Virus record (IMG/VR): IMGVR_UViG_3300048625_000299
Span: 124,001-188,000 of that record
Strand: one strand, 5' to 3'
Length of the DNA stretch: 64,000 nt
The translations under genes and the position numbers were made by a program. Of this stretch, positions 30,239 through 64,000 are shown piece after piece; position 1 is the stretch's first letter, and every line of letters starts with the position of its first letter. Below the pieces are notes generated by a model, which saw nothing but the letters and a program-made list of their open reading frames with translations, was not told the origin of the DNA and ran no database searches.

Positions 30239-30245
30239 AAAGTAA

Positions 30246-30267
30246 GGCCCCTTTCGGGGCCTTTTTT
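30246..30267. terminator. Bidirectional rho-independent terminator
   Basis: GGCCCC-TTTC-GGGGCC-TTTTTT between convergent genes. Confidence 0.85.
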
Positions 30268-32665
30268 ATTGGAATGTTGGAATTGCTCCGCCCGTCTTAT
30301 ACCACGGCTGACCGAAAGAGTGTTTCTCTTTGTATATGCTGACTGGTGGTACTGATGGAGGCGTCTTCGAGCTGTTGCCGCCTGTAGGAGTAGATGGTGC
30401 TGCTGGTGATGCTGCAACAGCATTGCCAGGCAGGCTATCAAAGTTACCAGTAAACATATTGCTAAAGTCGTTGAACCCTCTAATCGTTTCCTGGAACCCT
30501 TGCAAGGCTGCAATCTGATCGTCCTTCAGTCCCATACTCTTCAAACTTCTAGTTTGAATCATCATCGGGGTGTCCGGAACGCCAGCAGCAGTCGCCCCTG
30601 CAGTAACGGCCATTGGGCTATTGACGTTACCTACATCGATGCCGGACCCGGACGCCACTGTCTTAGCATAGTTTGCGATCTCGACTGGGTTGGTCGAGGT
30701 ATGCCACTGCTTTAGGCCTTGAGCGATTGTCAGGTTAGCGTACAAGGGTCTTTCCCACTGACGACGTTGAGCCATTAAGCCAGCTTGCTTAGAAGGAAAT
30801 CTTGCAAATTGACCGCCGTCCGATGCTGTGTCGCCTGGTGCCCCGCCAAATTCCTTCATCCAGTTTGCAAACTTCAAGTTGCCTGGGTTGTTATTTCTAA
30901 ACGACATCGACCCAGGATACCAACCTTCAGCTTTTGCCTGGCCACCAAGGATTTGCGATTTCTCTTCTTCTGTCAGATCGCTGAATTTCAAAGTTAGCAG
31001 CGATCTGCGTGCTTCACCTGAAGCCTCTGGCTGCAAACCAGAAGGTGTTTCGGTTGGCTTTGCGTTGTTTGTCTGAGGGGTCGGAGTTGTGTCGGTCTCT
31101 GTTATGCTAGCACCAGTTGTTTTCGGTGTACGTAGTTTTCCAGCCGCATATGATGAAGCAGCAGTAACGCCAAATCCAACAGCAGCCGCACCAGCTGGCG
31201 TAATGAACGGGGTAAGAGCTGCAGAACCGATCGATCCAACAAGCCCCATAGCCTCCATACCAGCAGCAGCGTAATCGCCATTCTCGATATCATCATATAT
31301 CTGCGGAAGCGTCATAGCGACATTCAATGCGCCGAGAAGTTTACCACCATATTTCGAAAATATCGATCCTGCTTGTTTACCAGCATCGCCAACGGCACTG
31401 ACAGCTTCCTTGACTCTTACGCCAGCCTTTTCCATCGATGTGAGTTGGCCATTGGCAAGACGGTCCATCTTTGCCTGCTGAGCTACCGAACGTCCACCAG
31501 CATCGCCTGGGATGACAATACCACCAGCAGTCATTCTTTCCCCGACACGTAGAGGGGATGATGGAGCATTAGTGGGAACTTGCCATGGGGCAGCTGTTGC
31601 GGCAGCAGGTGCCGATGGCGTTACTGCTTGAGCTGCGTTGGCCGCACGGGCCGCGCCTAGTCTGTTGAGAGCGCCGACTCCCTTGTAGCTGCCATATAAT
31701 CCAGCTCCAAGTGTCGCGAGCCCAATCGATTCCTCGGAATATTGTTCGCCACCAAAGAATCCGCCAACACCGCCAAGGACACCACCAGTCCAACCGCCCA
31801 TCTTTTTACCTGCCAAGAACCCCATAGAGGCACCTGTCATGCCACCAAGGTTTTTCTTATTCAGTGGAAGATCTTTACCAGCAGCATCAGTGCCGACGCC
31901 GAGTCCTTCTTTGACGTATTTGGAGATGGTAGGACTGAGGTCTGCAAATGCTTCCTTGACGCCTTGAACGATTGCACCACCAACTGCTGTCCCTACATCC
32001 TTGGCTGTTTCTTTGATTTGGGTATTGAGCTGTTTGGACAATTCATCAGATGATGGCAACCCAGCGCCCTTAAGAAAATCTTCAAGGAAGTTCTTAATCT
32101 CGTCCTTATTTTTGTATATCAAACCACCAGCTGCAACGCCAAGACCAGCCTTAGCGATGGTGCCTAGGTTGCCAGACAACAGGTCTCCGAGGGACGATAG
32201 CATCCCTCCCTTATCACCTGCCTTCTCGTTCTTATTGTCGTTTGCGAACAAGGATCCGAGTGAGGATGGGGAAGATGCATATGGACGGTTGTCGCCAGCA
32301 TTTTTTGATATTTGGTTTTGCGCTTTTAGTTGCGCAGTGCTGAGACTACGAATATCTTTAAGTAGCGCATTCATGGAACGAAGTTGTGCATTCATCCCAC
32401 TGAGACTGCTTGCTGTAGTCTTGCTTACTTTCTTGATATCGACGACGTCGTCTTTTTGCTTTTTGTCTGTCGACTTGCTTCCACTACCTTGTTGCTTCTT
32501 ATACTCAGCAACAGTCTGTCTGATAATGGGGCCCACACCTAAACCCAGCTTATACAGCGATCCACGTGGATCGAATTGATCCATGACAGCTTCTTTAGCT
32601 GTTCTGGCTGCTCCCGTTACCGTCTTTCTGGTACCTTGTGCTGCTGCGTCTAGTATGTTGGCCAT
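30266..32665 (-). CDS. Tape-measure/baseplate-hub-like protein with NNPGNL muramidase-like domain
   Basis: Long Ala/Gly-rich helical sequence; FRNNNPGNLKF...FARFPSKQAGL motif; follows gp26/gp51. Confidence 0.65.
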   Translation of the reverse strand: MANILDAAAQGTRKTVTGAARTAKEAVMDQFDPRGSLYKLGLGVGPIIRQTVAEYKKQQGSGSKSTDKKQKDDVVDIKKVSKTTASSLSGMNAQLRSMNALLKDIRSLSTAQLKAQNQISKNAGDNRPYASSPSSLGSLFANDNKNEKAGDKGGMLSSLGDLLSGNLGTIAKAGLGVAAGGLIYKNKDEIKNFLEDFLKGAGLPSSDELSKQLNTQIKETAKDVGTAVGGAIVQGVKEAFADLSPTISKYVKEGLGVGTDAAGKDLPLNKKNLGGMTGASMGFLAGKKMGGWTGGVLGGVGGFFGGEQYSEESIGLATLGAGLYGSYKGVGALNRLGAARAANAAQAVTPSAPAAATAAPWQVPTNAPSSPLRVGERMTAGGIVIPGDAGGRSVAQQAKMDRLANGQLTSMEKAGVRVKEAVSAVGDAGKQAGSIFSKYGGKLLGALNVAMTLPQIYDDIENGDYAAAGMEAMGLVGSIGSAALTPFITPAGAAAVGFGVTAASSYAAGKLRTPKTTGASITETDTTPTPQTNNAKPTETPSGLQPEASGEARRSLLTLKFSDLTEEEKSQILGGQAKAEGWYPGSMSFRNNNPGNLKFANWMKEFGGAPGDTASDGGQFARFPSKQAGLMAQRRQWERPLYANLTIAQGLKQWHTSTNPVEIANYAKTVASGSGIDVGNVNSPMAVTAGATAAGVPDTPMMIQTRSLKSMGLKDDQIAALQGFQETIRGFNDFSNMFTGNFDSLPGNAVAASPAAPSTPTGGNSSKTPPSVPPVSIYKEKHSFGQPWYKTGGAIPTFQ

Positions 32666-53887: not shown

Positions 53888-54102
53888 TTGTGCAGACCAC
53901 GGACGCCAATTTTGCGCGTGATACAGAGAATCACGCGGTAATAAATACCAATACTACCGCGTTCATGCTATACAAACAGCAGCGAGACAAGTCACGTACA
54001 GTGGACGCACTCGCTGCTGAAGTCAACGATTTGAAGAGTGATATCAGCGAAATCAAACAATTATTAGGACAATTGATTAAAAATGCCTCTACTAATAGCT
54101 AA
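53884..54102 (+). CDS. Small conserved coiled-coil virion-associated protein
   Basis: RD...AVINTN...EVNDLKSDISEIKQLL; typical follower of DUF4815. Confidence 0.7.
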   Translation: MIVQTTDANFARDTENHAVINTNTTAFMLYKQQRDKSRTVDALAAEVNDLKSDISEIKQLLGQLIKNASTNS

Positions 54103-54886
54103 TGTAAACCCAACGTCCGACACGTTTCAGTCGTGGGTCGATAAGACGAATCAGATCGCAGATGCCATGTCGACTGTCGTTCTTACAACGGCCGCTAATA
54201 CCATTGGTGGACAAAATAGCGCTAACGCATTTGTGAATGGTATCTTTGCTGCTCAAACAATGGTGGCTGTCAGCGAGCTTCGTGGTGGGGGAGTCACTTC
54301 ATCTGCTAACTTGTATGTTACCTCTAATGCTCATTTTACGGGCGCTAACCTAAGTGCAGCTACGACGTATCTAAATCTTCAAGCAACGTCTGCTCTCGCT
54401 AACGCTACGATATTGACGATAACTGGTACTACTGCCAACGTGACGTCCAATTTGTACGTTAAGGGAAGCTCCTTGACAGTAGTTGCTGCTGGTAGAGTTG
54501 GTATCAATACGACATCCGCCGATGCTGCACTGACCGTAGTTGGTGGTGCGAACGTATCTGCGGCGCTGTATGTTGGCACCACAACTACATTGAATGGTAA
54601 CGTCGTTGCTACTGCCAACGTCACGTTGTACTCGGCAGGCGACAATTCGGTAGGAACGTTGTATTTGGGCAATACAGCAACTCGGTATCTGAAGTATGAT
54701 GGCACAAAGTTTATACTAGCCACAGCTAACCTACAAGTTAATGGTTACATCACAGCAAGCGGCATTACTACTGTCAGCAACACAGGAATCGACGGAGTTG
54801 ATGTCGCAGCATTTAAGGCTGCTTACGATAACCGCAACATACTAAGAGTATACGACGTCAACGGCACGCAGCTATTCTCTATGTGA
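54083..54886 (+). CDS. Putative fibre/fibritin-like virion protein
   Basis: DTFQSWVDKTN N-terminal motif; Thr/Asn/Gly beta-rich body. Confidence 0.6.
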   Translation: MPLLIANVNPTSDTFQSWVDKTNQIADAMSTVVLTTAANTIGGQNSANAFVNGIFAAQTMVAVSELRGGGVTSSANLYVTSNAHFTGANLSAATTYLNLQATSALANATILTITGTTANVTSNLYVKGSSLTVVAAGRVGINTTSADAALTVVGGANVSAALYVGTTTTLNGNVVATANVTLYSAGDNSVGTLYLGNTATRYLKYDGTKFILATANLQVNGYITASGITTVSNTGIDGVDVAAFKAAYDNRNILRVYDVNGTQLFSM

Positions 54887-54896
54887 TTGGTGATCC

Positions 54897-55907
54897 ATGG
54901 GAAGACCTCTTAAAATATTATCTTCATCGGGCTCAGCTATTTCCTTCAAGGAAATGTCCGATGCTGAAATCTACAACACATTTTCATATCCCATACTACA
55001 GCAGTTTGCCAGCAATTACGATTCAGGCAACTTGACTAGTAGTGGAGGATCTGGAACGCTATCGTCCGTCGGTAGCATAATTGATTATTATACCGTAGGT
55101 ACGGTAGGCGCTCATCCAACATCGGCAGTAGCTTACGATACAGACTCTGTATACTATAAGACCGATACAGTCACTGAAAGCATCACTCGTCCGCTCACGT
55201 GGGCTAATGGCGCAATCAGGGAAATGTCCGATGCTGAAATCAACACATACATTATCGATCCAACACTTGCCAACATGGCGAATGGTGGATTGGGGTCATA
55301 TTATTTGACATCCGGTAGTGCTCCGTCGCACGTAGGTGGCGGGACATGGACATCGAGGTATGGCAATGCGGATATAATCGACTCCGGTTCGTATGGCAGT
55401 CAGTCCATCACGGTCTGGCAATTGACTAGCATATCAGCTCCTTCTAGCACCGCACTGCCCGTTCGCTGGACAAACAACAACATATACCAATACCAAGGTT
55501 CGCTGATCAACAGCCTCACAGCACGATTCCGTAACAGAATGAAGACGACTGGAATCGGCCTCCACAGTATCGGAGCATCGGCTCCTGGAACTGGCACTTG
55601 GGCGTCCCGTGGATCATACCAAGACACAAAGCGTATAATATCGAATCTCGGATACACAGGATATTACACTGGATCGTATACTGGAACGTATGCGGGAGCA
55701 TACGCAGGTGACTATGCTGGTAGCTACATATTGTGGTACGGCGGAAGTATCGGCGCTTACTATACAGGTTACTACACTGGATATTACACTGGGTACTATA
55801 CGGGATACTATACTGGTTCGTATGCTGGAACGTATGCGGGTGATACTGTTACTGCTGGTACAGAATGGATCGGTAGTGCATATTATTTGTGGGTACGCAG
55901 AAGCTAA
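54897..55907 (+). CDS. Putative tail fibre/adhesin with Y-x-G-x tetrapeptide repeats
   Basis: YTGYYTGSYTGTYAGAYAGDYAGSY...YYTGYYTGYYTGYYTG; duplicated EMSDAEI module (22-bp exact DNA repeat at 54950 and 55220). Confidence 0.6.
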   Translation: MGRPLKILSSSGSAISFKEMSDAEIYNTFSYPILQQFASNYDSGNLTSSGGSGTLSSVGSIIDYYTVGTVGAHPTSAVAYDTDSVYYKTDTVTESITRPLTWANGAIREMSDAEINTYIIDPTLANMANGGLGSYYLTSGSAPSHVGGGTWTSRYGNADIIDSGSYGSQSITVWQLTSISAPSSTALPVRWTNNNIYQYQGSLINSLTARFRNRMKTTGIGLHSIGASAPGTGTWASRGSYQDTKRIISNLGYTGYYTGSYTGTYAGAYAGDYAGSYILWYGGSIGAYYTGYYTGYYTGYYTGYYTGSYAGTYAGDTVTAGTEWIGSAYYLWVRRS

Positions 55908-55910
55908 TAA

Positions 55911-56354
55911 ATGGAGTTAAAAATGAAATTCGAATTTCCTATCTGGGAAAACTTAGACACTAAAAATCGTATCCGCGTGAAAGCCACACAAGAGGATGGT
56001 ACATCCTCTGTTATGCTTATCCCAGTCGACGACACTAATGAACATTATCAGAGCTTACTTGAACAGGTGAGTATGGATGAGGTAGACACCAACTCTGAAC
56101 AACTCCGTCAAGCTGGAGCTGAAGGTCGCGAAAAGAGTGCCGCTCAGCAAGCCGAAAAGGCAGAACAGAAACGCGCCAATACGCTGTTCAACGCAAAGAT
56201 CGAAGCGTTTGAGATGCCAATCGTCCAGTCTGCTAGCAAAGCATGGAAGGCAAAGATTCGCAAGGCGACAACTTCTGTTGAGGTCGTAGCTATTGTGGCC
56301 GCATTGATTATTAAAGCAGGTGAACCAGTTGAAGAAAGTGCCGAAGCCAAATAA
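55911..56354 (+). CDS. Hypothetical protein, possibly fibre chaperone
   Basis: Between fibre gene and glycosyltransferase; LFNAKIEAFE...KAKIRKA. Confidence 0.55.
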   Translation: MELKMKFEFPIWENLDTKNRIRVKATQEDGTSSVMLIPVDDTNEHYQSLLEQVSMDEVDTNSEQLRQAGAEGREKSAAQQAEKAEQKRANTLFNAKIEAFEMPIVQSASKAWKAKIRKATTSVEVVAIVAALIIKAGEPVEESAEAK

Positions 56355-57030
56355 TGGCTTTGTAATTATTGCAACTTCCAAGAGGAAGTATTTGATCTCG
56401 GCAATTAATACTGCCGAGTCAATCAAAGATTATTATCCCGAAGCATCAGTAACATTATACACAACGCCAGACATACTTGCCGACAATGATGTCAGTATGT
56501 TCGACGAAGTGATCACTGATGGAGTGCCACGCGACCGCCGTGCAAAGCTATGGGCACTTAGTAGAACGCCATATGACACGACGGCATACTTAGATGCAGA
56601 TACGGTCGTCGTGTCATATGAGATAACCGATATCTTCGATCAGCTTGGTGATAGCGATATCATCTTTACCAAAATTAGACAGTACAACTCCAACCCAAAA
56701 GGGTACCTCGAAGACCCTGAGTATATCCGACATGGTGGGGTGTTTGTGTATAATAATAAACCAGACACACTGAAATTCATGGAGAACTGGTGGACGTTGT
56801 GGTTGACTACTAGATCGATTGAAGATTACAAACTTGCATATCCTGAGTACCCAGCACGCATGAAAGAGTGGGACCAATTCTACTTGTTCTATTTGGCTAA
56901 GCATACAAACCACAACCTCAAGTTAGGTTTCTTCGAAGATGATGCTCGCTGGAATTTCGTTAGTGGTTATTTACGCAGCGAGCTGAATGGTAAGCAACCA
57001 ATCATCGAACACTATACCATTAAAGATTAA
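56320..57030 (+). CDS. GT-A fold glycosyltransferase (GT8-like)
   Basis: KLWALSRTPYDTTAYLDADT (DxD)...GGVFVY...WDQF. Confidence 0.8.
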   Translation: MNQLKKVPKPNNGFVIIATSKRKYLISAINTAESIKDYYPEASVTLYTTPDILADNDVSMFDEVITDGVPRDRRAKLWALSRTPYDTTAYLDADTVVVSYEITDIFDQLGDSDIIFTKIRQYNSNPKGYLEDPEYIRHGGVFVYNNKPDTLKFMENWWTLWLTTRSIEDYKLAYPEYPARMKEWDQFYLFYLAKHTNHNLKLGFFEDDARWNFVSGYLRSELNGKQPIIEHYTIKD

Positions 57031-57034
57031 TATT

Positions 57035-57724
57035 ATGATTTTCGCGAATAGATTACCATCCGACCTTGTCGCTGACCTATACAAATTCAGCGACTGGTTC
57101 TTCAGTCAGCAGCTAGAGGATAGCGTCAAAATGACGCCTAAGAACCTCGATACTCAGTATGCTGTTAGTACTGAGTATCTCGAACTGATGAAATCGAGAC
57201 CAGATAATGTCGGGTATCCAGAAGAGGCACATGGGGCCGACTTCAGACATGTTGGCGCATATGATACAAATTTGTACTTCGATCGTGTGCAAGAGATCGA
57301 CCGCAAACTAATGAGTTTTACTGGCAGCCACAACAACGCTCTTAAAATGTATTACCCGCCAGGTGGATATATTGGATGGCATAACAATGCCAATGCGCCT
57401 GGATATAATATCTTGTTTACATATAGCGAAACAGGCGAAGGCGACTTCCGATACATCCATCCACAAACAGGCGAGTTGGTGATTATGCCCGATCGCAAGG
57501 GGTGGAGCTGTAAGGTTGGATATTATGATATCGTAGATGGCAACCCATTGTGGCATGCTGCATGGACAGGTTGTAATAGATTAAATTGGGCGTATATCAT
57601 TCATCCTGCTCTTTGGGCAAGCTTAGCCGAAGAGTTGGAAATTGATATCGACGCTATAACAAACATATTCGGACGCGATCCTACAAATGATGAAGCTGCA
57701 TCAAAGCTGGTTAGAAGAGGTTGA
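57035..57724 (+). CDS. 2OG-Fe(II) oxygenase-like protein
   Basis: YYPPGGYIGWHNN...LWHAAW...R jelly-roll motifs; HxN in place of HxD. Confidence 0.65.
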   Translation: MIFANRLPSDLVADLYKFSDWFFSQQLEDSVKMTPKNLDTQYAVSTEYLELMKSRPDNVGYPEEAHGADFRHVGAYDTNLYFDRVQEIDRKLMSFTGSHNNALKMYYPPGGYIGWHNNANAPGYNILFTYSETGEGDFRYIHPQTGELVIMPDRKGWSCKVGYYDIVDGNPLWHAAWTGCNRLNWAYIIHPALWASLAEELEIDIDAITNIFGRDPTNDEAASKLVRRG

Positions 57725-58313
57725 TGGCGATGTCGGTGTGTTCTGGTCCTCTGGGCTAGAGTCAACGTTGTTGCTGCTCATGTGCATAGAGAAGTATGGT
57801 AAGGATAGAGTACATACCTTCACACAAAAGTTTCCACATGATGATCCCTTTGACCGAGCAGTCAAGCACTACCACTACTTTGCAGACGCACTTGCAGATG
57901 AGATGGGGCTGTGCAACCATCATACAGTAGAGGTTGGTTCGGGGGGATTGAATAGCAACGAAGTCCGAATCGATTTATACAACGCTGCTATCAAACTTGT
58001 TCCGAATATCGAGGCGATATATGTTGGGGTTAATACTACACAAGTTGGGCGTCTCATAGACCCAACACAACGTCAAATCGTAGCGGACGCATGGGATACC
58101 GCAACCCTAATAAAAACACCTTTCATGGACATCAAAAAATACGAAGCGATTAAGATGTTTTATGAATATGGATACAGTCAGTGGATTACTAGCACGCGAT
58201 CGTGTGCTAGGTCTACAGTATATCATTGCGGTAGATGCTCCAATTGTACAGAGCGGAAGATGGGGTTCGATCAGGCCGGCATACAAGACCCAACGACTTA
58301 CATGATCGATTGA
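57687..58313 (+). CDS. QueC-like PP-loop ATPase
   Basis: SSGLES (PP-loop variant); TRSC...HCGRCSNC..R zinc site. Confidence 0.75.
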   Translation: MMKLHQSWLEEVDGDVGVFWSSGLESTLLLLMCIEKYGKDRVHTFTQKFPHDDPFDRAVKHYHYFADALADEMGLCNHHTVEVGSGGLNSNEVRIDLYNAAIKLVPNIEAIYVGVNTTQVGRLIDPTQRQIVADAWDTATLIKTPFMDIKKYEAIKMFYEYGYSQWITSTRSCARSTVYHCGRCSNCTERKMGFDQAGIQDPTTYMID

Positions 58314-58999
58314 ATCATTCTAACATTTGGGTTAAATTCATCTCCCAACCATAACCAATCTTCTTGGAATTCTGATAGATAGAGCTCATTGTATTCTACA
58401 GCATGGTCTCTATCTTTTGGTTTACGTGCAAAAGAATTACGCGGCTCAAAGTGTGATAATTTGCCACCACGTTGGCGTATAATCTCATCAACGAAGTTTT
58501 GCTCCCCATTGATTGGTGGGAGTGCCACCATTAAGTCGATAATGTAGCGCTGCATCCAATAGCGCGGCGATGTATGAAATGTTTCGGGGATGCATTTGAA
58601 GTCTCCGCCATTGAACTTATACAGCCCACCGTTGATAGTAAACCCTTCGCCCTTCCATCTAGTCCACCATCTGTATGGGGCAACCAATTCGTTAGGCGAA
58701 ACGTGTTGGTTGAATATATCAGTGACATCGTCCACAAACGTCCAATCGAGATCAGACACGAAACAAACCTGACCTTCCGGAGCCATGTTAAAGAAATCAA
58801 CTTTGTGCCATTGTCGTCTCCCATCGTCATTTTCGATCGGAATCACCTCTATGTGTTTGCCAAATTCAGACTTATCGTAAGTGGTGTAGCAGTGCAGTTG
58901 TAGCGGCAGATTTACATGATCTTTTAGCTGTCTGTAAAATCTTTCCACATGATTGGGCGTGTAGTTGGGCCCAGTGCAAACTGTATAAATCGGTATCAT
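58298..58999 (-). CDS. Glycosyltransferase-like protein
   Basis: VCTG..YTP.HVERF...WHKVDFF...DLD...GEQNFV. Confidence 0.65.
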   Translation of the reverse strand: MIPIYTVCTGPNYTPNHVERFYRQLKDHVNLPLQLHCYTTYDKSEFGKHIEVIPIENDDGRRQWHKVDFFNMAPEGQVCFVSDLDWTFVDDVTDIFNQHVSPNELVAPYRWWTRWKGEGFTINGGLYKFNGGDFKCIPETFHTSPRYWMQRYIIDLMVALPPINGEQNFVDEIIRQRGGKLSHFEPRNSFARKPKDRDHAVEYNELYLSEFQEDWLWLGDEFNPNVRMIQSIM

Positions 59000-59598
59000 A
59001 ACTTCTGGATTGCTACTTGCGATGAGTCAGGAATGTCCAATACCTCGATTCTATTCCAGTTGCAGTGTATGAAGGAATCTATCGCCAGTCTAGGAGATAG
59101 AGATGGATCGCCCGACTTTTCTTTTGCTGAGTGTTTAGTGTATTTCCAACGGGTTGCGTCGTCTAGTAGTATAACGCCCCCTTGCCGTATTAATTGGAAG
59201 CAACGAACAAGATCTTCAAGTACAGTTGCTGCAGTGTGATCGCCATCGATATAAATGAAGTCAATTCCTGAACCGATTCTGTGGATCACGTCCGATGATG
59301 GGATGTTATAAAAAGTAATCTTATCTCTATGAGTGCATTGGTTCATGTTGTCCACGAAGCGATCTTTTACAATATCCAGTACTGTCTCATCAACTTCGTA
59401 GTTTCCTTTAAACGGATCGATCGCTACGTGATTGACGATCGATGGATAATTGTCTACCATCCAAAACGTAGTGCGGCCTTCGAATACGCCAATCTCCATC
59501 GTATAAGATGGGTTGATAATATGCTTGTCAAATATGTGCTTAATATTCTTGGTACTGGCTTTTGCCCAATCTACGATATAATTGTAGCTCACTTCCAA
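58996..59598 (-). CDS. Class I SAM-dependent methyltransferase (Methyltransf_24-like)
   Basis: MEIGVFEGRTT...IDP...DFIYIDGDH....VLED...GGVILLDD. Confidence 0.88.
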   Translation of the reverse strand: MEVSYNYIVDWAKASTKNIKHIFDKHIINPSYTMEIGVFEGRTTFWMVDNYPSIVNHVAIDPFKGNYEVDETVLDIVKDRFVDNMNQCTHRDKITFYNIPSSDVIHRIGSGIDFIYIDGDHTAATVLEDLVRCFQLIRQGGVILLDDATRWKYTKHSAKEKSGDPSLSPRLAIDSFIHCNWNRIEVLDIPDSSQVAIQKL

Positions 59599-60266
59599 TA
59601 CTCCTTCACGATCGGGTCATCTAATACGTCTGTTGGCTTAGGGTGGCCATGAAATATACACACAGCGTACGATGGACGATATTTAAATTTAGCGCCGTCG
59701 CATAGATCAGCGCCACGGCGATAAGAGTAAACCTCTCCTCGAGGAATAGTAGCGACTGGCAGCTTCTCGTGCCACAGGAAGCGATCGACCCCTTTGTACG
59801 TCGCCATATGTCTTTCTGGGTCTTGCATGAAGTGCTCGTATATTGACGATGCGTCCTTCCATATCATTATGCTGGAATTATACATCGTATTGCGTTCCAT
59901 CCAATCCGAGAGAATGATTGGATCTTTCCAATAAGCCATGCATACAGTCAAGCTGTCGGAGGCTAGTTCAAATAGGTGGTCGATGTTTCCATGAATGACT
60001 ACGTCTAGGTCAAACAGCATCTTAACGTCATACTGCTCTAACTTAGGATGAACAAGAATGGGAAGCTTAAACCACCACGTCTCGAAGTCATGCTTGGATT
60101 CGATTGGCAGTATGTGGATCGATTGATCGATCCCAGTAGGATCATCGGTGTAGCAATAAATAGGGGTGAGTGGATCACCCCAACGCCGAAGCATCGATGC
60201 TAGATTGTTAACATATTCGGCCGAGTATTTTTGGCCCCACTTCAGACAGACATAACAAGTTTTCAT
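59589..60266 (-). CDS. Glycosyltransferase-like protein
   Basis: CLKWGQKYSAEYVNNL...WWFKL...FDLDVVI...NSSIM...CIFHG.PKP. Confidence 0.75.
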   Translation of the reverse strand: MKTCYVCLKWGQKYSAEYVNNLASMLRRWGDPLTPIYCYTDDPTGIDQSIHILPIESKHDFETWWFKLPILVHPKLEQYDVKMLFDLDVVIHGNIDHLFELASDSLTVCMAYWKDPIILSDWMERNTMYNSSIMIWKDASSIYEHFMQDPERHMATYKGVDRFLWHEKLPVATIPRGEVYSYRRGADLCDGAKFKYRPSYAVCIFHGHPKPTDVLDDPIVKEYWK

Positions 60267-60288
60267 ATTATAATGTGTTGAGGAACGT

Positions 60289-61326
60289 ATGTATATTTAT
60301 CGTGATGGAATAGAATCTTTGCACATCGAGCTTACAAATAAATGTAACGCTCGATGTCCCCAGTGCTCGAGAACGAATAATGTAGAGATTGAAAATAGCC
60401 AAGTAGAGATCACAATACAACAGTTCAAGTCTTTTTTTGATGTTGGGTTCATCCAAAAACTGAAGAAGGTTAAGTTTTGTGGGAATTTTGGCGATCCTGC
60501 GATGGCTAAAGACTGCATCGCTATACACGAATACATTACTGATTGCAATCCTAACATTAACCTATCATTCGATACCAATGGCGGCATCCGCACGACTACG
60601 TTTTGGAAACAACTAGGTAGATTCTACATTGACAAGCCAGAGAGCCATATAATATTTCATATCGATGGTTTGGAGGATACCAATCACATATACAGAGCAG
60701 ATGTCAGCTTCTCCAATGTAATGAAGAACGCAAGGGCGGCGATTTCGACTGGTGCGAATGTGGTTTGGGCATTTATTCCATTCATGCACAATGAGCATCA
60801 AGTAGAGGAGGCTGAGCAAATATCAAAGCAAATGGGATTCACTACGTTTGCTGTTAAGATAAGCTCGAGGTTTGAACATAAGCTCAAACCATTTCCATAC
60901 CGCGATTCTAAAACAGGAATCACCAAGCACATATATCCAGCAACCTCTTCTGAGTTCAACGTGAATGCATTATTAGCCAACCTTGATGAGCCGGTATGTG
61001 CTGCAGAAAAAAGGAAAGAAGTATACGTAGATGCTAGAGGCAGAGTCCACCCATGCTGTTGGTATGGGTCGGGGTATGAGACTAATCAAGATTTTAGACA
61101 AGCCGTCGATGCTCAACATAATCCTCACCTGAACGCCACGCCAATATGCGATGCTACTAATACACAACTATTCCACAACATCAAACAAGCATGGACGGTA
61201 GCAGACAACATACTAGCCAAACCTTGCCACAAGAAGTGTAGTGGTAGAGTGATGAATTTCTGGATGATAGATGGCGAAATTACACCACAGAAGAACTACG
61301 CTGAATGGCTAAGGGAAGACCTATGA
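60289..61326 (+). CDS. Radical SAM enzyme with SPASM/twitch-like C-terminus
   Basis: CNARCPQC (CxxxCxxC); FCGNFGDP; VDARG.VHPCCW...CHKKC. Confidence 0.9.
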   Translation: MYIYRDGIESLHIELTNKCNARCPQCSRTNNVEIENSQVEITIQQFKSFFDVGFIQKLKKVKFCGNFGDPAMAKDCIAIHEYITDCNPNINLSFDTNGGIRTTTFWKQLGRFYIDKPESHIIFHIDGLEDTNHIYRADVSFSNVMKNARAAISTGANVVWAFIPFMHNEHQVEEAEQISKQMGFTTFAVKISSRFEHKLKPFPYRDSKTGITKHIYPATSSEFNVNALLANLDEPVCAAEKRKEVYVDARGRVHPCCWYGSGYETNQDFRQAVDAQHNPHLNATPICDATNTQLFHNIKQAWTVADNILAKPCHKKCSGRVMNFWMIDGEITPQKNYAEWLREDL

Positions 61327-61910
61327 TATTCACAACCGATGTTGGTAATATAAATGTCACAATTGCTGACGTTATCACGGATGATTTTCAGTTCTTGATG
61401 GATGGTGCAGCGGCAGAGCGGGCCATTGATTATGCACGACTCGAGTTAGGAAAGAAGTATGAATATAGCGTCGTACTTTCATACAATAGCATACCATATG
61501 GTTTCTTCTTGATGTGTAATGGAGGCAGATATGCACCCAACGTGCTACGCGTATACACCAAGCTGTATACTATACCTCAGTTCAGATCCGCAGCTAATAT
61601 AGATAAATTCCTGCTGCCAGGAGACACTGCTGGCAGAGTGATGTATCAATCGCATAGTATAATCGCCAACTTCGTTGAGGATATACTACCGACAACAGAA
61701 ATCAAACCATACGATTTATACTTCTACTCGCGCGCTCCTGGAGACACTCTGATAGTATCGCTGATGAATAAATTCGCAAGAGTCAAATGGACTGCCGTCG
61801 ACGACATAGTGTTCCTTACAGGGCGGAAAGAATCAGATCCGCACTGTTGGAAGCATATTGTATATAAAGGCGACTTGGCGGCATTCACTCAACCATCAAG
61901 ACCTATTTAA
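61323..61910 (+). CDS. Hypothetical protein, possibly GNAT-like
   Basis: LRVYTKLYTIPQFR resembles GNAT motif A; weak. Confidence 0.4.
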   Translation: MIFTTDVGNINVTIADVITDDFQFLMDGAAAERAIDYARLELGKKYEYSVVLSYNSIPYGFFLMCNGGRYAPNVLRVYTKLYTIPQFRSAANIDKFLLPGDTAGRVMYQSHSIIANFVEDILPTTEIKPYDLYFYSRAPGDTLIVSLMNKFARVKWTAVDDIVFLTGRKESDPHCWKHIVYKGDLAAFTQPSRPI

Positions 61911-62594
61911 TATCCGAACGATCGCAGCACCCAAATCCCATTTGCCGAATACTGGATCACGTGGATGTTGGTGGTGGTGGTCGTGGTAAGTTTCGCCAGC
62001 TAGTAGCCAAGCGAGATATGGCCTGCTGATTGCTTTGCCGTCCTTATGTCCGAGGTAGTTCACTGAAGCCTGTCCTAAGAACCCATATGTATTGATAATG
62101 GTCCACGATATAGGACCAAAGAGTATGCTCATCACTACAAACCCAAGTATTGCGACCGGTAGGTAGTACTTCATTTGAGCTTGGTACAGTGGATTGCGTA
62201 AATTTGTTTTATTGGCGTATGCCATATTAAAATCATAATATGCAATCATCAAGTTAGCCCAAAGCCCCTTATGTGGACCGTGTGGATCTCTGTCGGTGTC
62301 GACGTATCTGTGGTGCTTATTGTGTGTCGCTGCCCACGACAGTACTTGCGTAAACGCAAAAGCCGCACCGAGCACCAAAAACATTACTTCTGCCCATCTA
62401 GGACATTCCCAAGCATAGTGCGTGACGTACCTGTGGTAATATGCCGACACTACGCCAGCCACAATTACCATACCTGCTATGAACCAAAGAATATACACCC
62501 ATTGTGGGTCAGTTATCAGTGTGTATAGTGTAAAGGCCGTACTAGCGAAGAATATTGTTTGTTGGATTATCTTTTGCATCCATGTTGGAATCAT
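61896..62594 (-). CDS. Membrane fatty-acid (delta-9-like) desaturase
   Basis: Three His boxes HRYVTH, HNKHH, HDHHH; DTDRDPHGP; TM segments. Confidence 0.9.
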   Translation of the reverse strand: MIPTWMQKIIQQTIFFASTAFTLYTLITDPQWVYILWFIAGMVIVAGVVSAYYHRYVTHYAWECPRWAEVMFLVLGAAFAFTQVLSWAATHNKHHRYVDTDRDPHGPHKGLWANLMIAYYDFNMAYANKTNLRNPLYQAQMKYYLPVAILGFVVMSILFGPISWTIINTYGFLGQASVNYLGHKDGKAISRPYLAWLLAGETYHDHHHQHPRDPVFGKWDLGAAIVRILNRS

Positions 62595-63400
62595 GGGGTC
62601 ACCTCATACGTCAGATCTATGTTGAATTCTTTTAGGCTTTCTTTTGCCTTCCAGTAGTTATCTCCCTCTACTGCAGACATCATCGCATCTTTATCGGTCC
62701 ACATGAATTCATATATGCGACTGGTTGGCGTATTGCTGCCCTTGCACCCATACACCTTTTTAGTTTTGTAAAACGACTCATTCATAAATGGCATCATAAA
62801 GTTTTGCTCGATTGTGGACCGAATGTCTTGAATGCCGTCGAACATACCAATCATATCGCTGTTGGTATAATCATACTCGACTCGTAGGCCATATGTTTGC
62901 TTTGGTGACGTATCGTCACATGCATACTCAGTCATAATAAAATGTGTGCGAGGCATTACGCCACCGTTGACTGCTGTGTGATGAGCCTCAGCTGAATTGA
63001 TCTGGCGGATACGACCGTCCGCTGGTAGATGATAACCTCGTTGCTTATCATAATCATAATAAAAGCTGCCACGATTCTCGATTACAGACAAGTGGTATTT
63101 GTTATCAGGGTCATTGTGGTGACGCAAACAGAATCCAGCTGGCAGAATAATGAACACCGATCTGTTCATTTTGAATGGCATGTCGGCAATCACACGTTCG
63201 AATATTGTATCCTTGAGGACGGGATTGATAATCGGTCTATGGAAATATGTGTAGTCTTCAAACTCTGGATCTTCTGCGAAGCATGCCTGCAATATACCAT
63301 TGCGCGCAACGTTGGGGAGGATCTTCGTCTCCCAATCATGTTTGACTTCTGCTGGATCGTATAGGAAATCACCAAACAACTGTACTGATTCATGCATCAT
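62591..63400 (-). CDS. Asp/Asn beta-hydroxylase-like 2OG-Fe(II) cupin
   Basis: LRHHND (HxD)...YHL...HHTAVNGG..PRTHFI. Confidence 0.7.
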   Translation of the reverse strand: MMHESVQLFGDFLYDPAEVKHDWETKILPNVARNGILQACFAEDPEFEDYTYFHRPIINPVLKDTIFERVIADMPFKMNRSVFIILPAGFCLRHHNDPDNKYHLSVIENRGSFYYDYDKQRGYHLPADGRIRQINSAEAHHTAVNGGVMPRTHFIMTEYACDDTSPKQTYGLRVEYDYTNSDMIGMFDGIQDIRSTIEQNFMMPFMNESFYKTKKVYGCKGSNTPTSRIYEFMWTDKDAMMSAVEGDNYWKAKESLKEFNIDLTYEVTP

Positions 63401-63594
63401 ACTCTTGTCCTTACTGATGAATTGTGTGCCGATGTTGGTAGGGAGAAGTCGTATGCTGCGAATTTGTTTTGATTGATTTGCTTGATCAAATCTTCATATG
63501 CTAGTGTGGCTGTCATCCCAATTCCCATATACACTCTCTCATCGACACGTAGCAGTGCCATGGTTTTTCCAGCTTGTGTTGAATACCTTATCAC
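63397..63594 (-). CDS. Small hypothetical protein
   Basis: Fills gap in minus-strand operon with overlapping junction. Confidence 0.55.
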   Translation of the reverse strand: MIRYSTQAGKTMALLRVDERVYMGIGMTATLAYEDLIKQINQNKFAAYDFSLPTSAHNSSVRTRV

Positions 63595-63595
63595 A

Positions 63596-64000
63596 TCAAC
63601 CTCTCTCTATAATCATACTTGCACACTTGCCGCCAAATCCAAATGAATTATTCAACGTCTTAGTAATTGCGCGTTTTGTTGGATGCATGACGACTCCTGC
63701 GTGCTTAGTGACCACACATCCTTGTGTATGTGGTACGATTCCACGGTTCATGGATATGATGCTGTAGATTGTCTCTAATACACCAGCGGCCGCAAACGTG
63801 TGTCCTATCTTACCTTTGTTCGAATACACAGGCAGCAACCCACAAACATCGATGATCGCATCATACTCTACTTCATCGCCACCCGGTGTAGAAGTTCCAT
63901 GTGCATTGACTACGTCCGGACTGCCGCCGTATTTGATAGCTTGCTCCATTGCGGTCCTAGCACCCTCGCCACTAGGCAATGTGCGGTTAAATGCATCCGA
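63596..64000 (-). CDS. Beta-ketoacyl-ACP synthase (FabF/FabB) C-terminal part; 5' end outside window
   Basis: VNAHGTSTP.GD..E...SNKGKIGHTFAAAG..E...NNSFGFGG. Confidence 0.92.
   Translation of the reverse strand, partial: SDAFNRTLPSGEGARTAMEQAIKYGGSPDVVNAHGTSTPGGDEVEYDAIIDVCGLLPVYSNKGKIGHTFAAAGVLETIYSIISMNRGIVPHTQGCVVTKHAGVVMHPTKRAITKTLNNSFGFGGKCASMIIERG

What the first reader, a model, noticed from the sequence alone, without database searches (positions are those of the whole stretch)
58298..64000. Phage-borne lipid/glycan tailoring island: FabF/B, desaturase, hydroxylase, radical SAM, methyl- and glycosyltransferases
Seen: contiguous operons on both strands encode a ketosynthase (truncated by the window edge), an HxD hydroxylase, a three-His-box desaturase, a radical SAM-SPASM enzyme, a possible GNAT, a methyltransferase and two more GT-like genes. 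Inference: a small biosynthetic cluster making an acylated, unsaturated and hydroxylated glycolipid or acyl modification, for host membrane/LPS remodelling (superinfection exclusion) or virion decoration. A ketosynthase-desaturase pair in a lytic myovirus is unusual; the components could also be independently acquired auxiliary genes.
Basis: partly seen in the sequence, partly recalled or inferred. Interest (0 to 1): 0.65.

Follow-up and report, generated by a model that had tools for sequence, protein, structure and literature searches.

The report
Phage fatty-acid and glycan tailoring genes
A large freshwater T4-like phage carries, among its tail-fibre genes, a ketosynthase–hydroxylase–desaturase operon next to sugar-modifying genes; the ketosynthase–desaturase pairing recurs in many uncultured aquatic phages, so this is a real but largely already-noted kind of host-lipid-remodelling gene set rather than a new biosynthetic pathway.

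Summary
The window is part of a complete 234,864-bp freshwater T4-like myovirus. The region lies between tail-fibre genes and has the composition of the rest of the phage.

There are two separable modules.
- **Lipid operon (translationally coupled):** a FabF-like ketosynthase with an intact Cys-His-His triad, a 65-aa protein of unknown function, a Cpz10/AspH-like 2OG/Fe(II) hydroxylase, and a stearoyl-CoA-desaturase-type membrane desaturase that keeps all nine metal-binding histidines.
- **Tailoring set:** two paralogous GT-A-like glycosyltransferases, a Methyltransf_24 methyltransferase, and a radical SAM enzyme coupled to a GNAT-like protein.

The phage has no ACP, FabD, FabG, FabA/Z, PPTase, acyl-ligase, PlsC-type acyltransferase or ferredoxin, so the ketosynthase must use host carriers.

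The ketosynthase belongs to a deep clade seen in viral contigs and metagenomes (246 IMG/VR contigs). Cellular FabF proteins are at most 37% identical to it. It sits near a desaturase in at least seven gene contexts, and 18 of 43 long desaturase loci also carry it. The glycan genes do not travel with this pair.

The fabF plus desaturase combination was already listed for freshwater pelagimyophages, and phage Δ9 desaturases have been shown experimentally.

Verdict: a new member of a known kind. A single glycolipid pathway is not supported.

The parts
63596..64000 (-). 3' 134 codons of a 375-aa FabF-like beta-ketoacyl synthase. The full gene is genome 187596-188723 (L002:7596-8723), which runs 723 bases past the window end.
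   Evidence: Pfam ketoacyl-synt 2e-27 and Ketoacyl-synt_C 8e-20. NCBIfam fabF scores 241 bits, below its 493.75 cut-off. C150, H275, H308 and K303 are invariant in 30 relatives. Best PDB match is Bartonella FabF 3e60, 1e-50. The 30 short metagenomic relatives aligned here separate from cellular FabF with SH-aLRT 100.
63397..63594 (-). 65-aa protein of unknown function between the ketosynthase and the hydroxylase. It is not an ACP.
   Evidence: No Pfam, PHROG or NCBIfam hit. Conserved at 41-73% in related phages. It starts 1 nt after the ketosynthase stop, and its stop overlaps the hydroxylase start by 4 nt. It has no DSL-type phosphopantetheine site at an ACP-like position (sequence).
62591..63400 (-). 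269-aa 2OG/Fe(II) dioxygenase (Cpz10/AspH-like double-stranded beta-helix) with a C-terminal alpha/beta domain.
   Evidence: PDB 7v4f (Cpz10 beta-hydroxylase) 4e-9, with the HxD...H triad aligned. H95, D97, H141, R151 and H153 are invariant. AF2 pLDDT 91. Foldseek 7v4m 3e-11, TM 0.76. The nearest Atlas folds are all-viral Asp/Asn/Pro-hydroxylase clusters, TM 0.69/0.82 over residues 5-266. No hydrophobic segment.
61896..62594 (-). 232-aa membrane fatty-acid desaturase of the stearoyl-CoA desaturase / DesC (delta-9) type.
   Evidence: Pfam FA_desaturase 4e-13, 50 bits against a 29.7 cut-off. Best PDB matches are SCD1 4zyo and 4ymk. H54, H59, H91, H94, H95, H183, H204, H207, H208 plus D99, D103, H105 are invariant in 17 viral relatives. 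Hydrophobic segments at 30-54, 67-89 and 141-168. Its start overlaps the hydroxylase stop by 4 nt.
61305..61910 (+). 201-aa GNAT-like protein, translationally coupled to the radical SAM gene. The true start is probably Met7 at 61323.
   Evidence: No family hit. AF2 pLDDT 77. All top Foldseek PDB hits are GNATs, but with E >= 3e-3. VIA-align Z 8.7, rmsd 3.6 over 142 residues to PA3270, with 572 chains at Z >= 5. The Atlas model matches GNAT clusters at TM 0.55-0.64. Homologues are 192-204 aa.
60289..61326 (+). 345-aa radical SAM enzyme with a Cys-rich C-terminal extension (twitch/SPASM-like).
   Evidence: Pfam Radical_SAM 5.5e-8. phrog_21308 1e-18. Weak NCBIfam hits to SPASM/twitch maturases, all far below cut-off. 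C19, C23, C26 and C64, C237, C256, C313, C317 are conserved in relatives.
59589..60266 (-). 225-aa GT-A-like glycosyltransferase with a DLD motif.
   Evidence: phrog_1962 glycosyltransferase 1e-12, full length. Atlas features score 0.98 to viral 'glycosyltransferase' clusters; the nearest Pfam-bearing clusters are Nucleotid_trans and GT8. Paralogue of the 233-aa gene.
58996..59598 (-). 200-aa class I SAM-dependent methyltransferase (Methyltransf_24).
   Evidence: Pfam PF13578 3e-16 and Methyltransf_3 3e-6. In relatives with a 53%-identical ketosynthase, this slot holds an APS-kinase-like gene and a sulfotransferase-like gene instead.
58298..58999 (-). 233-aa GT-A-like glycosyltransferase paralogue with a DLD motif.
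   Evidence: phrog_1962 7e-6. hhalign to the 225-aa family gives 98.8%, E 1e-16 over 147 columns. 64-77% identical in related phages.

Best explanation
The region is part of the tail-fibre or 'host recognition' hypervariable region of a complete 235-kb freshwater T4-like myovirus. It holds two separable sets of auxiliary genes.

**(1) A lipid-remodelling operon: ketosynthase, 65-aa protein, 2OG hydroxylase, desaturase.**
- The ketosynthase belongs to a deeply diverged clade seen in viral contigs and metagenomes. It keeps the Cys-His-His elongating active site.
- The phage encodes no carrier protein or any other FAS-II enzyme. The inference is that it condenses host acyl-ACP with host malonyl-ACP, acting as an extra or replacement FabF/FabB-type elongation step during infection.
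- The desaturase is a stearoyl-CoA-desaturase/DesC-type di-iron membrane enzyme. The inference is that it puts a cis double bond, probably delta-9, into host acyl chains using host electron donors.
- Together they would keep up or shift membrane lipid synthesis and unsaturation in the infected cell.
- The hydroxylase belongs to a phage-wide Cpz10/AspH-like family. Its substrate is unknown, and a lipid role is only suggested by the operon.

**(2) A glycan or surface tailoring set:** two GT-A paralogues, a methyltransferase, and a radical SAM enzyme coupled to a GNAT-like protein. In relatives the methyltransferase is replaced by an APS-kinase-like gene plus a sulfotransferase-like gene. This set is of the kind described in pelagimyophage host-recognition clusters.

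**Shown:** gene identities, catalytic residues, operon coupling, absence of partner genes, and recurrent ketosynthase-desaturase linkage.

**Inferred:** substrates, regiospecificity, and the physiological effect.
For: **Phage and location.**
- The record is complete, with direct terminal repeats.
- T4-type baseplate genes lie upstream.
- Tail-fibre, fibre-assembly and S74 chaperone genes lie on both sides.

**Ketosynthase.**
- Domain hits and the catalytic triad are present.
- The whole genome has no ACP, FabA/Z, FabG, FabD, PPTase, AMP-ligase, PlsC-type acyltransferase or Fer2 ferredoxin; the positive controls did score.

**Desaturase.** All nine His plus the DxxxDPH motif are invariant, and SCD1 is the best solved match.

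**Operon.** Stop and start codons overlap by 4 nt across the 65-aa, hydroxylase and desaturase genes, and 1 nt separates the ketosynthase from the 65-aa gene.

**Linkage.**
- 246 IMG/VR contigs encode the ketosynthase clade.
- A desaturase homologue lies within 10 kb in 25 of 84 loci, spread over several different gene orders.
- Reciprocally, 22 of 80 desaturase loci carry the ketosynthase, and 18 of the 43 loci that are 15 kb or longer.
- The two genes are directly adjacent in L169, beside a gp45 clamp gene.
- L064 repeats ketosynthase plus hydroxylase plus desaturase at 45, 33 and 26% identity.

**Separability of the glycan set**, and the MT to APS-kinase/sulfotransferase swap.

**Literature.**
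- Cyanophage desaturases are delta-9 enzymes by heterologous expression (PMC5776448).
- Host-recognition clusters with GTs and rSAM genes, and fabF plus stearoyl-CoA desaturase in freshwater pelagimyophages (PMC7029224).
- Fatty-acid biosynthesis is an AMG-targeted pathway in ocean viruses (PMC11360552).
Against: - No activity was measured for any of these proteins.
- The ketosynthase scores below the FabF equivalog cut-off (241 against 494 bits). It sits on a very long branch away from all cellular FabF, so its substrate may have changed.
- A membrane desaturase acts on acyl-lipid or acyl-CoA, not acyl-ACP. The two enzymes therefore need not act in sequence.
- The hydroxylase's nearest solved relative works on a nucleoside-antibiotic intermediate, not a lipid. 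It also has no membrane anchor.
- Co-occurrence counts are not corrected for shared ancestry of the contigs.
- The island is present in an RNA library, but only as contigs, which does not show transcription.
- Marine relatives also have sulfotransferase, Methyltransf_24 and GT25 genes within 10 kb of the ketosynthase. A looser functional tie between lipid and glycan genes is therefore not excluded.
Confidence: 0.6

Rival explanations
1. One pathway. The ketosynthase, hydroxylase and desaturase build a hydroxylated unsaturated acyl chain. The GNAT-like protein and the glycosyltransferases attach it to a sugar, the methyltransferase caps it, and the result is a phage-specified glycolipid or acylated glycan on the host surface.
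For: - All genes are contiguous and kept together in the closest relatives, down to 53% ketosynthase identity.
- L064 again combines ketosynthase, two hydroxylases, desaturase and rSAM/SPASM genes.
- L169 has GT2-ketosynthase-desaturase in a row.
- Marine relatives keep sulfotransferase, MT24 and GT25 genes within 10 kb of the ketosynthase.
- GNAT-fold enzymes include acyl-ACP users such as AHL synthases, which appear among the fold matches (LasI, Z 8.2).
Against: - The modules lie on different strands, in separate operons.
- The pair occurs widely without these GT, MT, rSAM or GNAT-like families, and those genes occur without the pair.
- The genome has no ACP, acyl-ligase or PlsC-type acyltransferase.
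- The GNAT-like protein is coupled to the rSAM gene, not to the lipid operon.
- It lacks a recognisable acyl-CoA binding motif (sequence).
Confidence: 0.15
2. Virion decoration. The glycosyltransferases, methyltransferase, hydroxylase and GNAT-like protein modify the phage's own tail fibres or other structural proteins encoded next to them, rather than host envelope molecules.
For: - The island sits between a 2186-aa virion-type protein and 1879-aa and 1051-aa fibre-like proteins, with a fibre-assembly gene and an S74 chaperone nearby.
- AspH-type enzymes hydroxylate protein Asp/Asn residues (established knowledge of the family). AspH structures are among the weaker fold matches (rank 37).
- Virion glycosylation by phage GTs is known in mycobacteriophages (my own recollection, not checked here).
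Against: - It does not explain a ketosynthase or a membrane desaturase.
- The island genes are on the opposite strand or in separate operons from the fibre genes.
- The single T4-type late promoter motif found precedes the fibre-assembly gene, not the island operons.
- The published reading of such clusters favours host O-chain modification (PMC7029224).
Confidence: 0.12
3. Host shut-off. The ketosynthase does not boost lipid synthesis but disturbs it. For example, it could sequester host FabD or ACP, as overproduced FabF does in E. coli. That would divert malonyl-CoA and energy to phage production.
For: - The phage brings only the condensing enzyme and no other FAS-II step.
- The clade has diverged far from cellular FabF.
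- FabF overproduction blocking fatty-acid synthesis in E. coli is from my own knowledge (Subrahmanyam and Cronan 1998), not checked here.
Against: - All catalytic residues are invariant across the clade, which argues for selection on catalysis.
- Recurrent linkage to a desaturase that needs acyl chains as substrate fits lipid production better.
Confidence: 0.05
4. Assembly chimera or host contamination at the end of the window.
For: KS hits in the cultured-phage collection are mostly unannotated contigs or plainly bacterial records (one is a Salmonella enterica assembly), at only 28-35% identity. This shows that such contamination happens.
Against: - The record is complete with terminal repeats, and the island is internal (genome 182-189 kb of 235 kb).
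- GC matches the rest of the phage.
- Fibre genes lie on both sides.
- The same layout occurs in independent contigs from other samples.
- No genome among 185,579 species has a ketosynthase more than 37% identical.
Confidence: 0.01

Closest known systems
fabF plus stearoyl-CoA desaturase in freshwater pelagimyophages ('fonsimyophages'), and the host recognition cluster of pelagi- and cyanomyophages (Zaragoza-Solas et al. 2020, PMC7029224)
   Same: - T4-like aquatic myoviruses.
- A hypervariable region that mixes tail-fibre genes with glycosyltransferases and radical SAM genes.
- fabF, a desaturase and a 2OG oxygenase listed together.
- My group D loci carry speH next to the ketosynthase, as that paper reports.
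   Different: - This phage is much larger (235 kb). Its baseplate gene is nearest to Caulobacter Cr30 and Sinorhizobium phiM12 (41% and 39%).
- Here the ketosynthase, a small protein, a Cpz10-like hydroxylase and the desaturase form one overlapping operon inside the fibre region.
- The paper gives annotation only, with no analysis of linkage or of the enzyme clade.
Cyanophage lipid desaturases, vFAD (Roitman et al. 2018, PMC5776448), and cold-brine viral FADs (Zhong et al. 2020, PMC7300359)
   Same: Phage-encoded membrane desaturases of the delta-9 type with three His boxes. They are proposed to tune host membrane fluidity, and delta-9 activity on C16 was shown by expression.
   Different: - The protein here is short (232 aa) and only 20-39% identical to the other viral desaturases aligned, apart from one close relative at 87%.
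- Those papers do not mention ketoacyl synthase or fabF (for PMC5776448, for PMC7300359).
Bacterial FabF (KAS II) and FabB (KAS I)
   Same: Thiolase fold, Cys-His-His triad, conserved Lys, a C-terminal NSFGFGG loop, and alignment over the full length.
   Different: - About 35-40 residues shorter.
- 28-37% identical to cellular enzymes.
- Below the equivalog cut-off.
- A separate clade on a long branch.
- No cognate ACP or FAS-II partners in the genome.
Cpz10 (caprazamycin beta-hydroxylase, PDB 7v4f) and the AspH / LpxO / OlsC family of 2OG beta-hydroxylases
   Same: Double-stranded beta-helix fold, HxD...H iron triad and a conserved Arg. LpxO and OlsC show that AspH-like enzymes can hydroxylate lipid acyl chains (established knowledge).
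   Different: - No PF05118 hit at E <= 0.01.
- No membrane segment, unlike LpxO.
- An extra C-terminal alpha/beta domain.
- The nearest fold relatives are viral proteins of unknown substrate.

Membership tests
FabF / KAS II (NCBIfam TIGR03150 equivalog) | Both ketoacyl-synthase domains (thiolase fold), full length | tested here: met
   PF00109 97 bits and PF02801 71.5 bits, both above 20.8. Residues 3-372 align to 2-406 of the 407-position model.
FabF / KAS II (NCBIfam TIGR03150 equivalog) | Cys-His-His catalytic triad and active-site Lys of elongating synthases | tested here: met
   C150, H275, H308 and K303 are invariant in 30 relatives. They align to the ACSTG, HGTST and GH motifs of PDB 3e60.
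FabF / KAS II (NCBIfam TIGR03150 equivalog) | Score at or above the curated equivalog cut-off | tested here: not met
   241.4 bits against a cut-off of 493.75. No other KS model reaches its cut-off either.
FabF / KAS II (NCBIfam TIGR03150 equivalog) | Groups with cellular FabF in a tree | tested here: not met
   The 30 short ketosynthases form one side of a branch (SH-aLRT 100, branch lengths 1.22 + 1.93) against 31 cellular FabF (quick IQ-TREE). The best cellular identity is 37%.
FabF / KAS II (NCBIfam TIGR03150 equivalog) | Condenses acyl-ACP with malonyl-ACP and elongates 16:1 to 18:1 | not testable with these tools
   Needs an enzyme assay or complementation.
Stearoyl-CoA desaturase / DesC-type delta-9 membrane desaturase (PF00487) | Family model above the gathering score | tested here: met
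   50.1 bits against 29.7. The NCBIfam DesA equivalog scores only 25 against 400.
Stearoyl-CoA desaturase / DesC-type delta-9 membrane desaturase (PF00487) | HxxxxH, HxxHH, HxxHH boxes plus the extra His that bind the di-iron centre | tested here: met
   H54, H59, H91, H94, H95, H183, H204, H207 and H208 are invariant in 17 sequences, with D99, D103 and H105 after box 2.
Stearoyl-CoA desaturase / DesC-type delta-9 membrane desaturase (PF00487) | Membrane hairpins | tested here: met
   Hydrophobic segments at 30-54, 67-89 and 141-168 by a Kyte-Doolittle window. This is a crude method.
Stearoyl-CoA desaturase / DesC-type delta-9 membrane desaturase (PF00487) | Delta-9 regiospecificity, and acyl-lipid versus acyl-CoA substrate | not testable with these tools
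   Inferred only from the SCD1 best match and from published viral enzymes.
2OG/Fe(II) dioxygenase, Cpz10 / AspH-like | Double-stranded beta-helix fold | tested here: met
   AF2 pLDDT 91. Foldseek 7v4m E 3e-11, TM 0.76 by target; next are proline hydroxylases.
2OG/Fe(II) dioxygenase, Cpz10 / AspH-like | HxD/E...H iron triad and a basic residue for 2OG | tested here: met
   H95, D97, H141 and R151 are invariant in 19 sequences and aligned to the Cpz10 motifs.
2OG/Fe(II) dioxygenase, Cpz10 / AspH-like | PF05118 Asp_Arg_Hydrox model match | tested here: not met
   No Pfam family at E <= 0.01. PF05118 finds nothing in the genome. Only 16% of the nearest viral Atlas cluster carries it.
LpxO / OlsC-type lipid acyl-chain 2-hydroxylase | Membrane anchor and lipid substrate | tested here: not met
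   No hydrophobic segment. The substrate cannot be tested here.
Radical SAM with SPASM/twitch domain | CX3CX2C cluster motif and the Radical_SAM model | tested here: met
   C19, C23 and C26 are conserved. PF04055 scores 33.6 bits against 29.5.
Radical SAM with SPASM/twitch domain | Auxiliary-cluster Cys motif / PF13186 | tested here: inconclusive
   No PF13186 hit. C237-x18-C256 with GX4C, and C313-x3-C317, are conserved. Twitch/SPASM NCBIfam hits are far below their cut-offs.
GNAT acyltransferase | GNAT fold | tested here: inconclusive
   All top fold hits are GNATs, but Foldseek E >= 3e-3. VIA-align Z 8.7 is at the level the tool calls common for unmatched models. Atlas TM 0.55-0.64 on a low-confidence model.
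GNAT acyltransferase | Sequence-family match / acyl-CoA binding motif (R/Q-x-x-G-x-G/A) | tested here: not met
   No Pfam, NCBIfam, PHROG or PDB sequence hit. No such motif follows the fourth strand in the sequence.
Host recognition cluster of aquatic T4-like myophages | Hypervariable block among tail-fibre genes that carries glycosyltransferases and other non-structural genes | tested here: met
   Fibre, fibre-assembly and S74 chaperone genes lie on both sides. GT, MT and rSAM genes lie inside. Gene content is swapped between relatives. Definition taken from PMC7029224.

The most novel reading that the evidence does not exclude
The ketosynthase clade, which was found here only in viral contigs and unclassified metagenome contigs, is no longer a plain FabF. 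Together with the co-transcribed 65-aa protein, the 2OG hydroxylase and the desaturase, it would make a phage-specific hydroxylated, unsaturated acyl product. That product would be used by the neighbouring GNAT-like and glycosyltransferase genes, or would act as a signal or a receptor-masking lipid. This would amount to a small phage-encoded lipid natural-product pathway that runs on host ACP.
Probability: 0.1. Interest if true: 0.8.

Novelty: new member of a known kind. Interest (0 to 1): 0.4.

Why it matters
Phage desaturases are an accepted way for viruses to retune host membranes. A condensing enzyme linked to them has so far only been listed in annotations.

This work adds three points:
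- The ketosynthase forms a deep clade, seen in viral contigs and metagenomes, with an intact active site.
- The phage brings no carrier protein or other FAS-II step.
- The ketosynthase and desaturase travel together across several T4-like lineages in fresh and sea water.

This gives a concrete and testable picture: chain elongation plus O2-dependent desaturation as a two-gene viral lipid module. If confirmed, it would extend viral control of host lipid composition from desaturation alone to acyl-chain synthesis. That matters for membrane physiology of abundant aquatic bacteria during infection.

It is not a surprise to specialists, and no new mechanism is demonstrated.

Tried and rejected
- **The 65-aa gene as an ACP.** Rejected. 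It has no PP-binding hit, even at E 0.1, and no serine motif at the right position. Small neighbours of the ketosynthase in other lineages are not ACPs either.
- **DNA similarity to cultured phages.** Megablast of the island found nothing. Ketosynthase protein hits there are mostly unannotated contigs or plainly bacterial records at 28-35% identity, so they look like host DNA filed as phage.
- **Profile-profile comparison of neighbour families with island families.** The first run timed out. The reduced run linked only the two GT paralogues. It showed no relation between the 2OG oxygenase next to the marine ketosynthases and the 269-aa hydroxylase.
- **Pfam on neighbour families in other lineages.** Mostly blank.
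- **Promoter and terminator scans.** At chance level. One T4 late-promoter motif lies before the fibre-assembly gene and none before the island operons.
- **Reads.** Only contigs were available. The island is present at 100% identity in a freshwater RNA library, but this cannot show transcription, strand or timing.
- **Alphaproteobacterial origin of the ketosynthase.** The best cellular hits are mostly Alphaproteobacteria. The unrooted tree puts the clade outside all sampled cellular FabF, so no donor is claimed.
- **Tree quality.** The careful tree search did not finish, so the quick tree is reported.
- **Not used:** Complex prediction and the large representative-protein search.

Full report
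**Where the window lies**

The window is bases 124,001-188,000 of a 234,864-base virus record. The record has direct terminal repeats and is rated complete. Upstream genes match T4-type baseplate tube cap and wedge subunits. The gp6-like protein is nearest to Caulobacter phage Cr30 (41%) and Sinorhizobium phages phiN3 and phiM12 (39%), then cyanophages (35%). The DNA is held by freshwater metagenomes. GC across the finding is 0.43-0.45, inside the window's usual range.

**Check of the observation**

Nine ORFs fill 58298-64000 almost without gaps.
- Family scans give Methyltransf_24, Radical_SAM, FA_desaturase and Ketoacyl-synt_C.
- PHROGs add 'glycosyltransferase' phrog_1962 for the 225-aa and 233-aa proteins.
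- Reading past the window edge gives a full 375-aa ketosynthase. It has both KS domains and its best NCBIfam match is fabF at 241 bits, under the 493.75 cut-off.
- The 269-aa protein matches the solved beta-hydroxylase Cpz10 (7v4f, 4e-9), with HxD and the distal His aligned.

The same genes in the same order occur in IMG/VR contig L004 (ketosynthase 79% identical). They also occur in ENA contigs up to 237,764 bases long (ketosynthase 53%, hydroxylase 50%, desaturase 40%). Only 'SPASM' and 'GNAT' need qualifying.

**Anatomy**

Minus-strand operon:
- Ketosynthase, 63596 to window-equivalent 64723.
- 65-aa gene, 63397-63594, starting 1 nt after the ketosynthase stop.
- Hydroxylase, 62591-63400, with a 4-nt overlap.
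- Desaturase, 61896-62594, with a 4-nt overlap.

Plus-strand pair:
- Radical SAM, 60289-61326.
- The 201-aa gene. Homologues are 192-204 aa, so it probably starts at Met7 (61323), overlapping the rSAM stop.

Minus-strand trio: GT225, MT200 and GT233, with 10-nt and 4-nt overlaps.

Flanks:
- Upstream: a 2186-aa phrog_358 protein and a plus-strand set of unannotated genes, a GT-like gene and a QueC-like gene.
- Downstream: a 109-aa L-shaped-tail-fibre-assembly homologue (2e-24), preceded by the only TATAAATA motif in 20 kb. Then come 1879-aa and 1051-aa fibre-like proteins and a 305-aa fibre tip with an S74 chaperone domain.

This matches the 'host recognition cluster' described for pelagimyophages and cyanomyophages. 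That cluster mixes tail fibres with glycosyltransferases and radical SAM genes (PMC7029224).

**The ketosynthase**

C150, H275, H308 and K303 are invariant in 30 relatives, as is the C-terminal NSFGFGG loop. They align with the catalytic motifs of Bartonella FabF.

The word search found thousands of KS proteins. The best 120 are all 265-400 residues long, most of them 360-400, and 40-90% identical to the query. IMG/VR holds 246 contigs that encode a relative.

In one genome for each of 185,579 species, the best matches are ordinary 415-aa FabF proteins. Most are from Alphaproteobacteria, and none exceeds 37% identity.

A quick maximum-likelihood tree puts the 30 short proteins on one side of a branch with SH-aLRT 100. 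Branch lengths are 1.22 + 1.93 changes per site against 31 cellular FabF. The tree is unrooted, and only some of the 30 were checked to lie on phage contigs, so no donor is claimed.

The complete phage genome has no ACP, FabA/Z, FabG, FabD, PPTase, AMP-dependent ligase, PlsC-type acyltransferase or 2Fe-2S ferredoxin. The control genomes did score. All island genes are single copy. The inference is that the enzyme works on host ACP-bound substrates.

**The desaturase**

The 232-aa protein passes the Pfam threshold, and its best solved matches are stearoyl-CoA desaturases. In an alignment of 17 viral relatives the invariant residues are H54, H59, H91, H94, H95, H183, H204, H207 and H208, with D99, D103 and H105. 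This is the HxxxxH / HxxHH-x3-D-x3-DPH / HxxHH pattern of delta-9 enzymes. It has three hydrophobic stretches.

Among cultured phages only Pelagibacter phage Mosig has a homologue. Cyanophage desaturases were shown by expression to be delta-9 enzymes acting on C16 (PMC5776448). Cold-brine viral desaturases were modelled on the same human enzyme (PMC7300359).

**The hydroxylase**

The AlphaFold model is confident (pLDDT 91). Residues 1 to about 175 superpose on Cpz10 (E 3e-11, TM 0.76), then on free-proline hydroxylases. AspH is a distant match. H95, D97, H141, R151 and H153 are invariant.

The nearest Atlas folds, covering residues 5-266 including the C-terminal alpha/beta domain, are all-viral clusters. 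One has 197 members named Asp/Asn/Pro hydroxylase. An Asp/Asn beta-hydroxylase was reported as core to pelagimyophages.

The protein is therefore a member of a common phage oxygenase family. Its place in the operon suggests a lipid substrate but does not show one. It lacks the membrane anchor of LpxO-type lipid hydroxylases.

**Linkage of ketosynthase and desaturase**

I called genes in 84 ketosynthase-centred loci and clustered their proteins. The ketosynthase sits in at least five gene orders:
- **Group A** (this phage, L004, L005, L006, L009, L018): the four-gene operon.
- **L064**: ketosynthase (45%), a 114-aa gene, a hydroxylase homologue (33%), a second PF05118 hydroxylase, a desaturase (26%) and two rSAM genes, beside a DNA ligase.
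- **Group D**: a desaturase about 3 kb upstream, and an AdoMet decarboxylase directly downstream of the ketosynthase. This is the gene set published for freshwater fonsimyophages.
- **Marine group B** (beside gp32 and baseplate genes): the ketosynthase is followed by a 2OG-FeII_Oxy_3 protein in most loci. One desaturase, or two in tandem, lie about 5 kb upstream in several.
- **Group C** (33 loci): no desaturase within reach.

In all, 25 of 84 loci have a desaturase homologue.

The reciprocal search used 80 desaturase-centred loci. Of these, 22 carry the ketosynthase, and 18 of the 43 loci that are at least 15 kb long do. This search added two more contexts:
- L169, with GT2-ketosynthase-desaturase directly adjacent beside a gp45 clamp gene.
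- The L205 type, with the ketosynthase 3.4 kb downstream of the desaturase.

These counts are not corrected for relatedness. The number of different contexts still makes chance unlikely.

**The tailoring genes**

- GT225 and GT233 are paralogues (hhalign 98.8%). They have DxD motifs, and their nearest family-bearing look-alikes are Nucleotid_trans and GT8.
- In relatives with a 53%-identical ketosynthase, the methyltransferase slot holds an APS-kinase-like gene and a sulfotransferase-like gene. That is a swap of capping chemistry, typical of glycan tailoring.
- The rSAM protein has CX3CX2C and five further conserved cysteines, but no Pfam SPASM hit.
- The 201-aa protein has no sequence-family hit. 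Its model (pLDDT 77) matches GNAT folds consistently but weakly: Foldseek E >= 3e-3, VIA Z 8.7. An Atlas cluster of viral 382-aa proteins joins a similar fold to Methyltransf_24.
- These families are absent from most ketosynthase or desaturase loci. They also occur without the pair, in L212 and L236.

**How it most likely works**

Shown:
- Two operon-level modules inside the fibre region.
- Intact catalytic sites.
- No phage-encoded carrier or partner enzymes.
- Recurrent ketosynthase-desaturase linkage.

Inferred:
- The ketosynthase adds or replaces FabF/FabB-type condensation on host acyl-ACP.
- The desaturase introduces delta-9 double bonds into host acyl chains using host reductants.
- Both sustain or shift membrane lipid supply and fluidity in the infected cell.
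- The GT, MT and rSAM genes alter a host surface glycan, or possibly virion proteins.

The hydroxylase and the 65-aa protein remain unassigned.

**Expression**

A freshwater metatranscriptome library holds contigs that are 100% identical across the whole island. Contigs cannot show transcription, and DNA carry-over is possible.

**Comparison and novelty**

The closest described case is the annotation of fabF, stearoyl-CoA desaturase and a 2OG oxygenase in freshwater pelagimyophages, together with the host recognition cluster concept. Phage desaturases have been characterised, and fatty-acid synthesis is listed as an AMG-targeted pathway. In the papers I read I found no study of the ketosynthase clade or of its linkage to desaturases.

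The finding is therefore a new member of a known kind, with a modestly new operon form.

Noticed in passing
window 57687-58313 (+): A 208-aa QueC-like PP-loop protein (PF06508, 1e-10, C-terminal half only) with a CGRCSNC zinc motif. It sits in the glycan gene set, and its 3' end overlaps the 3' end of GT233 by 16 nt. It may be an amidotransferase-type sugar-modifying enzyme rather than a queuosine gene.
   Followed up: partly
L005:15127-16163 (also L006, L018): In relatives with the same island, the methyltransferase slot is occupied by a 140-aa APS-kinase-like gene and a 202-aa sulfotransferase-like gene. Methylation is swapped for sulfation.
   Followed up: partly
L066:11331-11744 and the other group D loci (L065-L071, L077-L080, L087): An AdoMet decarboxylase (speH, PF02675, 7e-14) lies directly downstream of the ketosynthase, with a desaturase about 3 kb upstream. 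This matches the gene list published for freshwater fonsimyophages.
   Followed up: partly
L023:5134-6685 and L026:2997-4626: Marine T4-like phages carry two tandem desaturase paralogues about 5 kb upstream of their ketosynthase.
   Followed up: no
L169:5923-8513: A GT2-ketosynthase-desaturase operon with overlapping ORFs lies next to a gp45 sliding-clamp gene. The pair can therefore sit in the replication region rather than the fibre region.
   Followed up: partly
window 61305-61910 (Atlas look-up): A viral Atlas cluster of 382-aa proteins combines a fold like the 201-aa protein with a Methyltransf_24 domain (TM 0.61 over residues 3-191). This hints that the GNAT-like protein and the methyltransferase act on the same substrate.
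   Followed up: no
window 30001-32000: A local GC rise to 0.52, against 0.40-0.47 around it. It coincides with a 799-aa minus-strand ORF (30266-32665) that has no PHROG match.
   Followed up: no
L002:9139-14778 (genome 189139-194778): A 1879-aa fibre-like protein built from dozens of 'GNTTI(T/A)GFANV'-type repeats, with a weak bactofilin-like hit.
   Followed up: no
window 54083-57724 (+): A plus-strand run of genes of 267, 336, 147, 236 and 245 aa has no Pfam or PHROG family. It is conserved at 44-86% in the related phages. The 236-aa protein has a DAD motif and looks GT-like.
   Followed up: partly
window 58298-64000 in run X2: Contigs of a freshwater metatranscriptome library cover the island at 100% identity. 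They break at about 59.1, 59.8 and 60.7 kb, and Illumina adaptor sequence sits at two of the breaks.
   Followed up: partly
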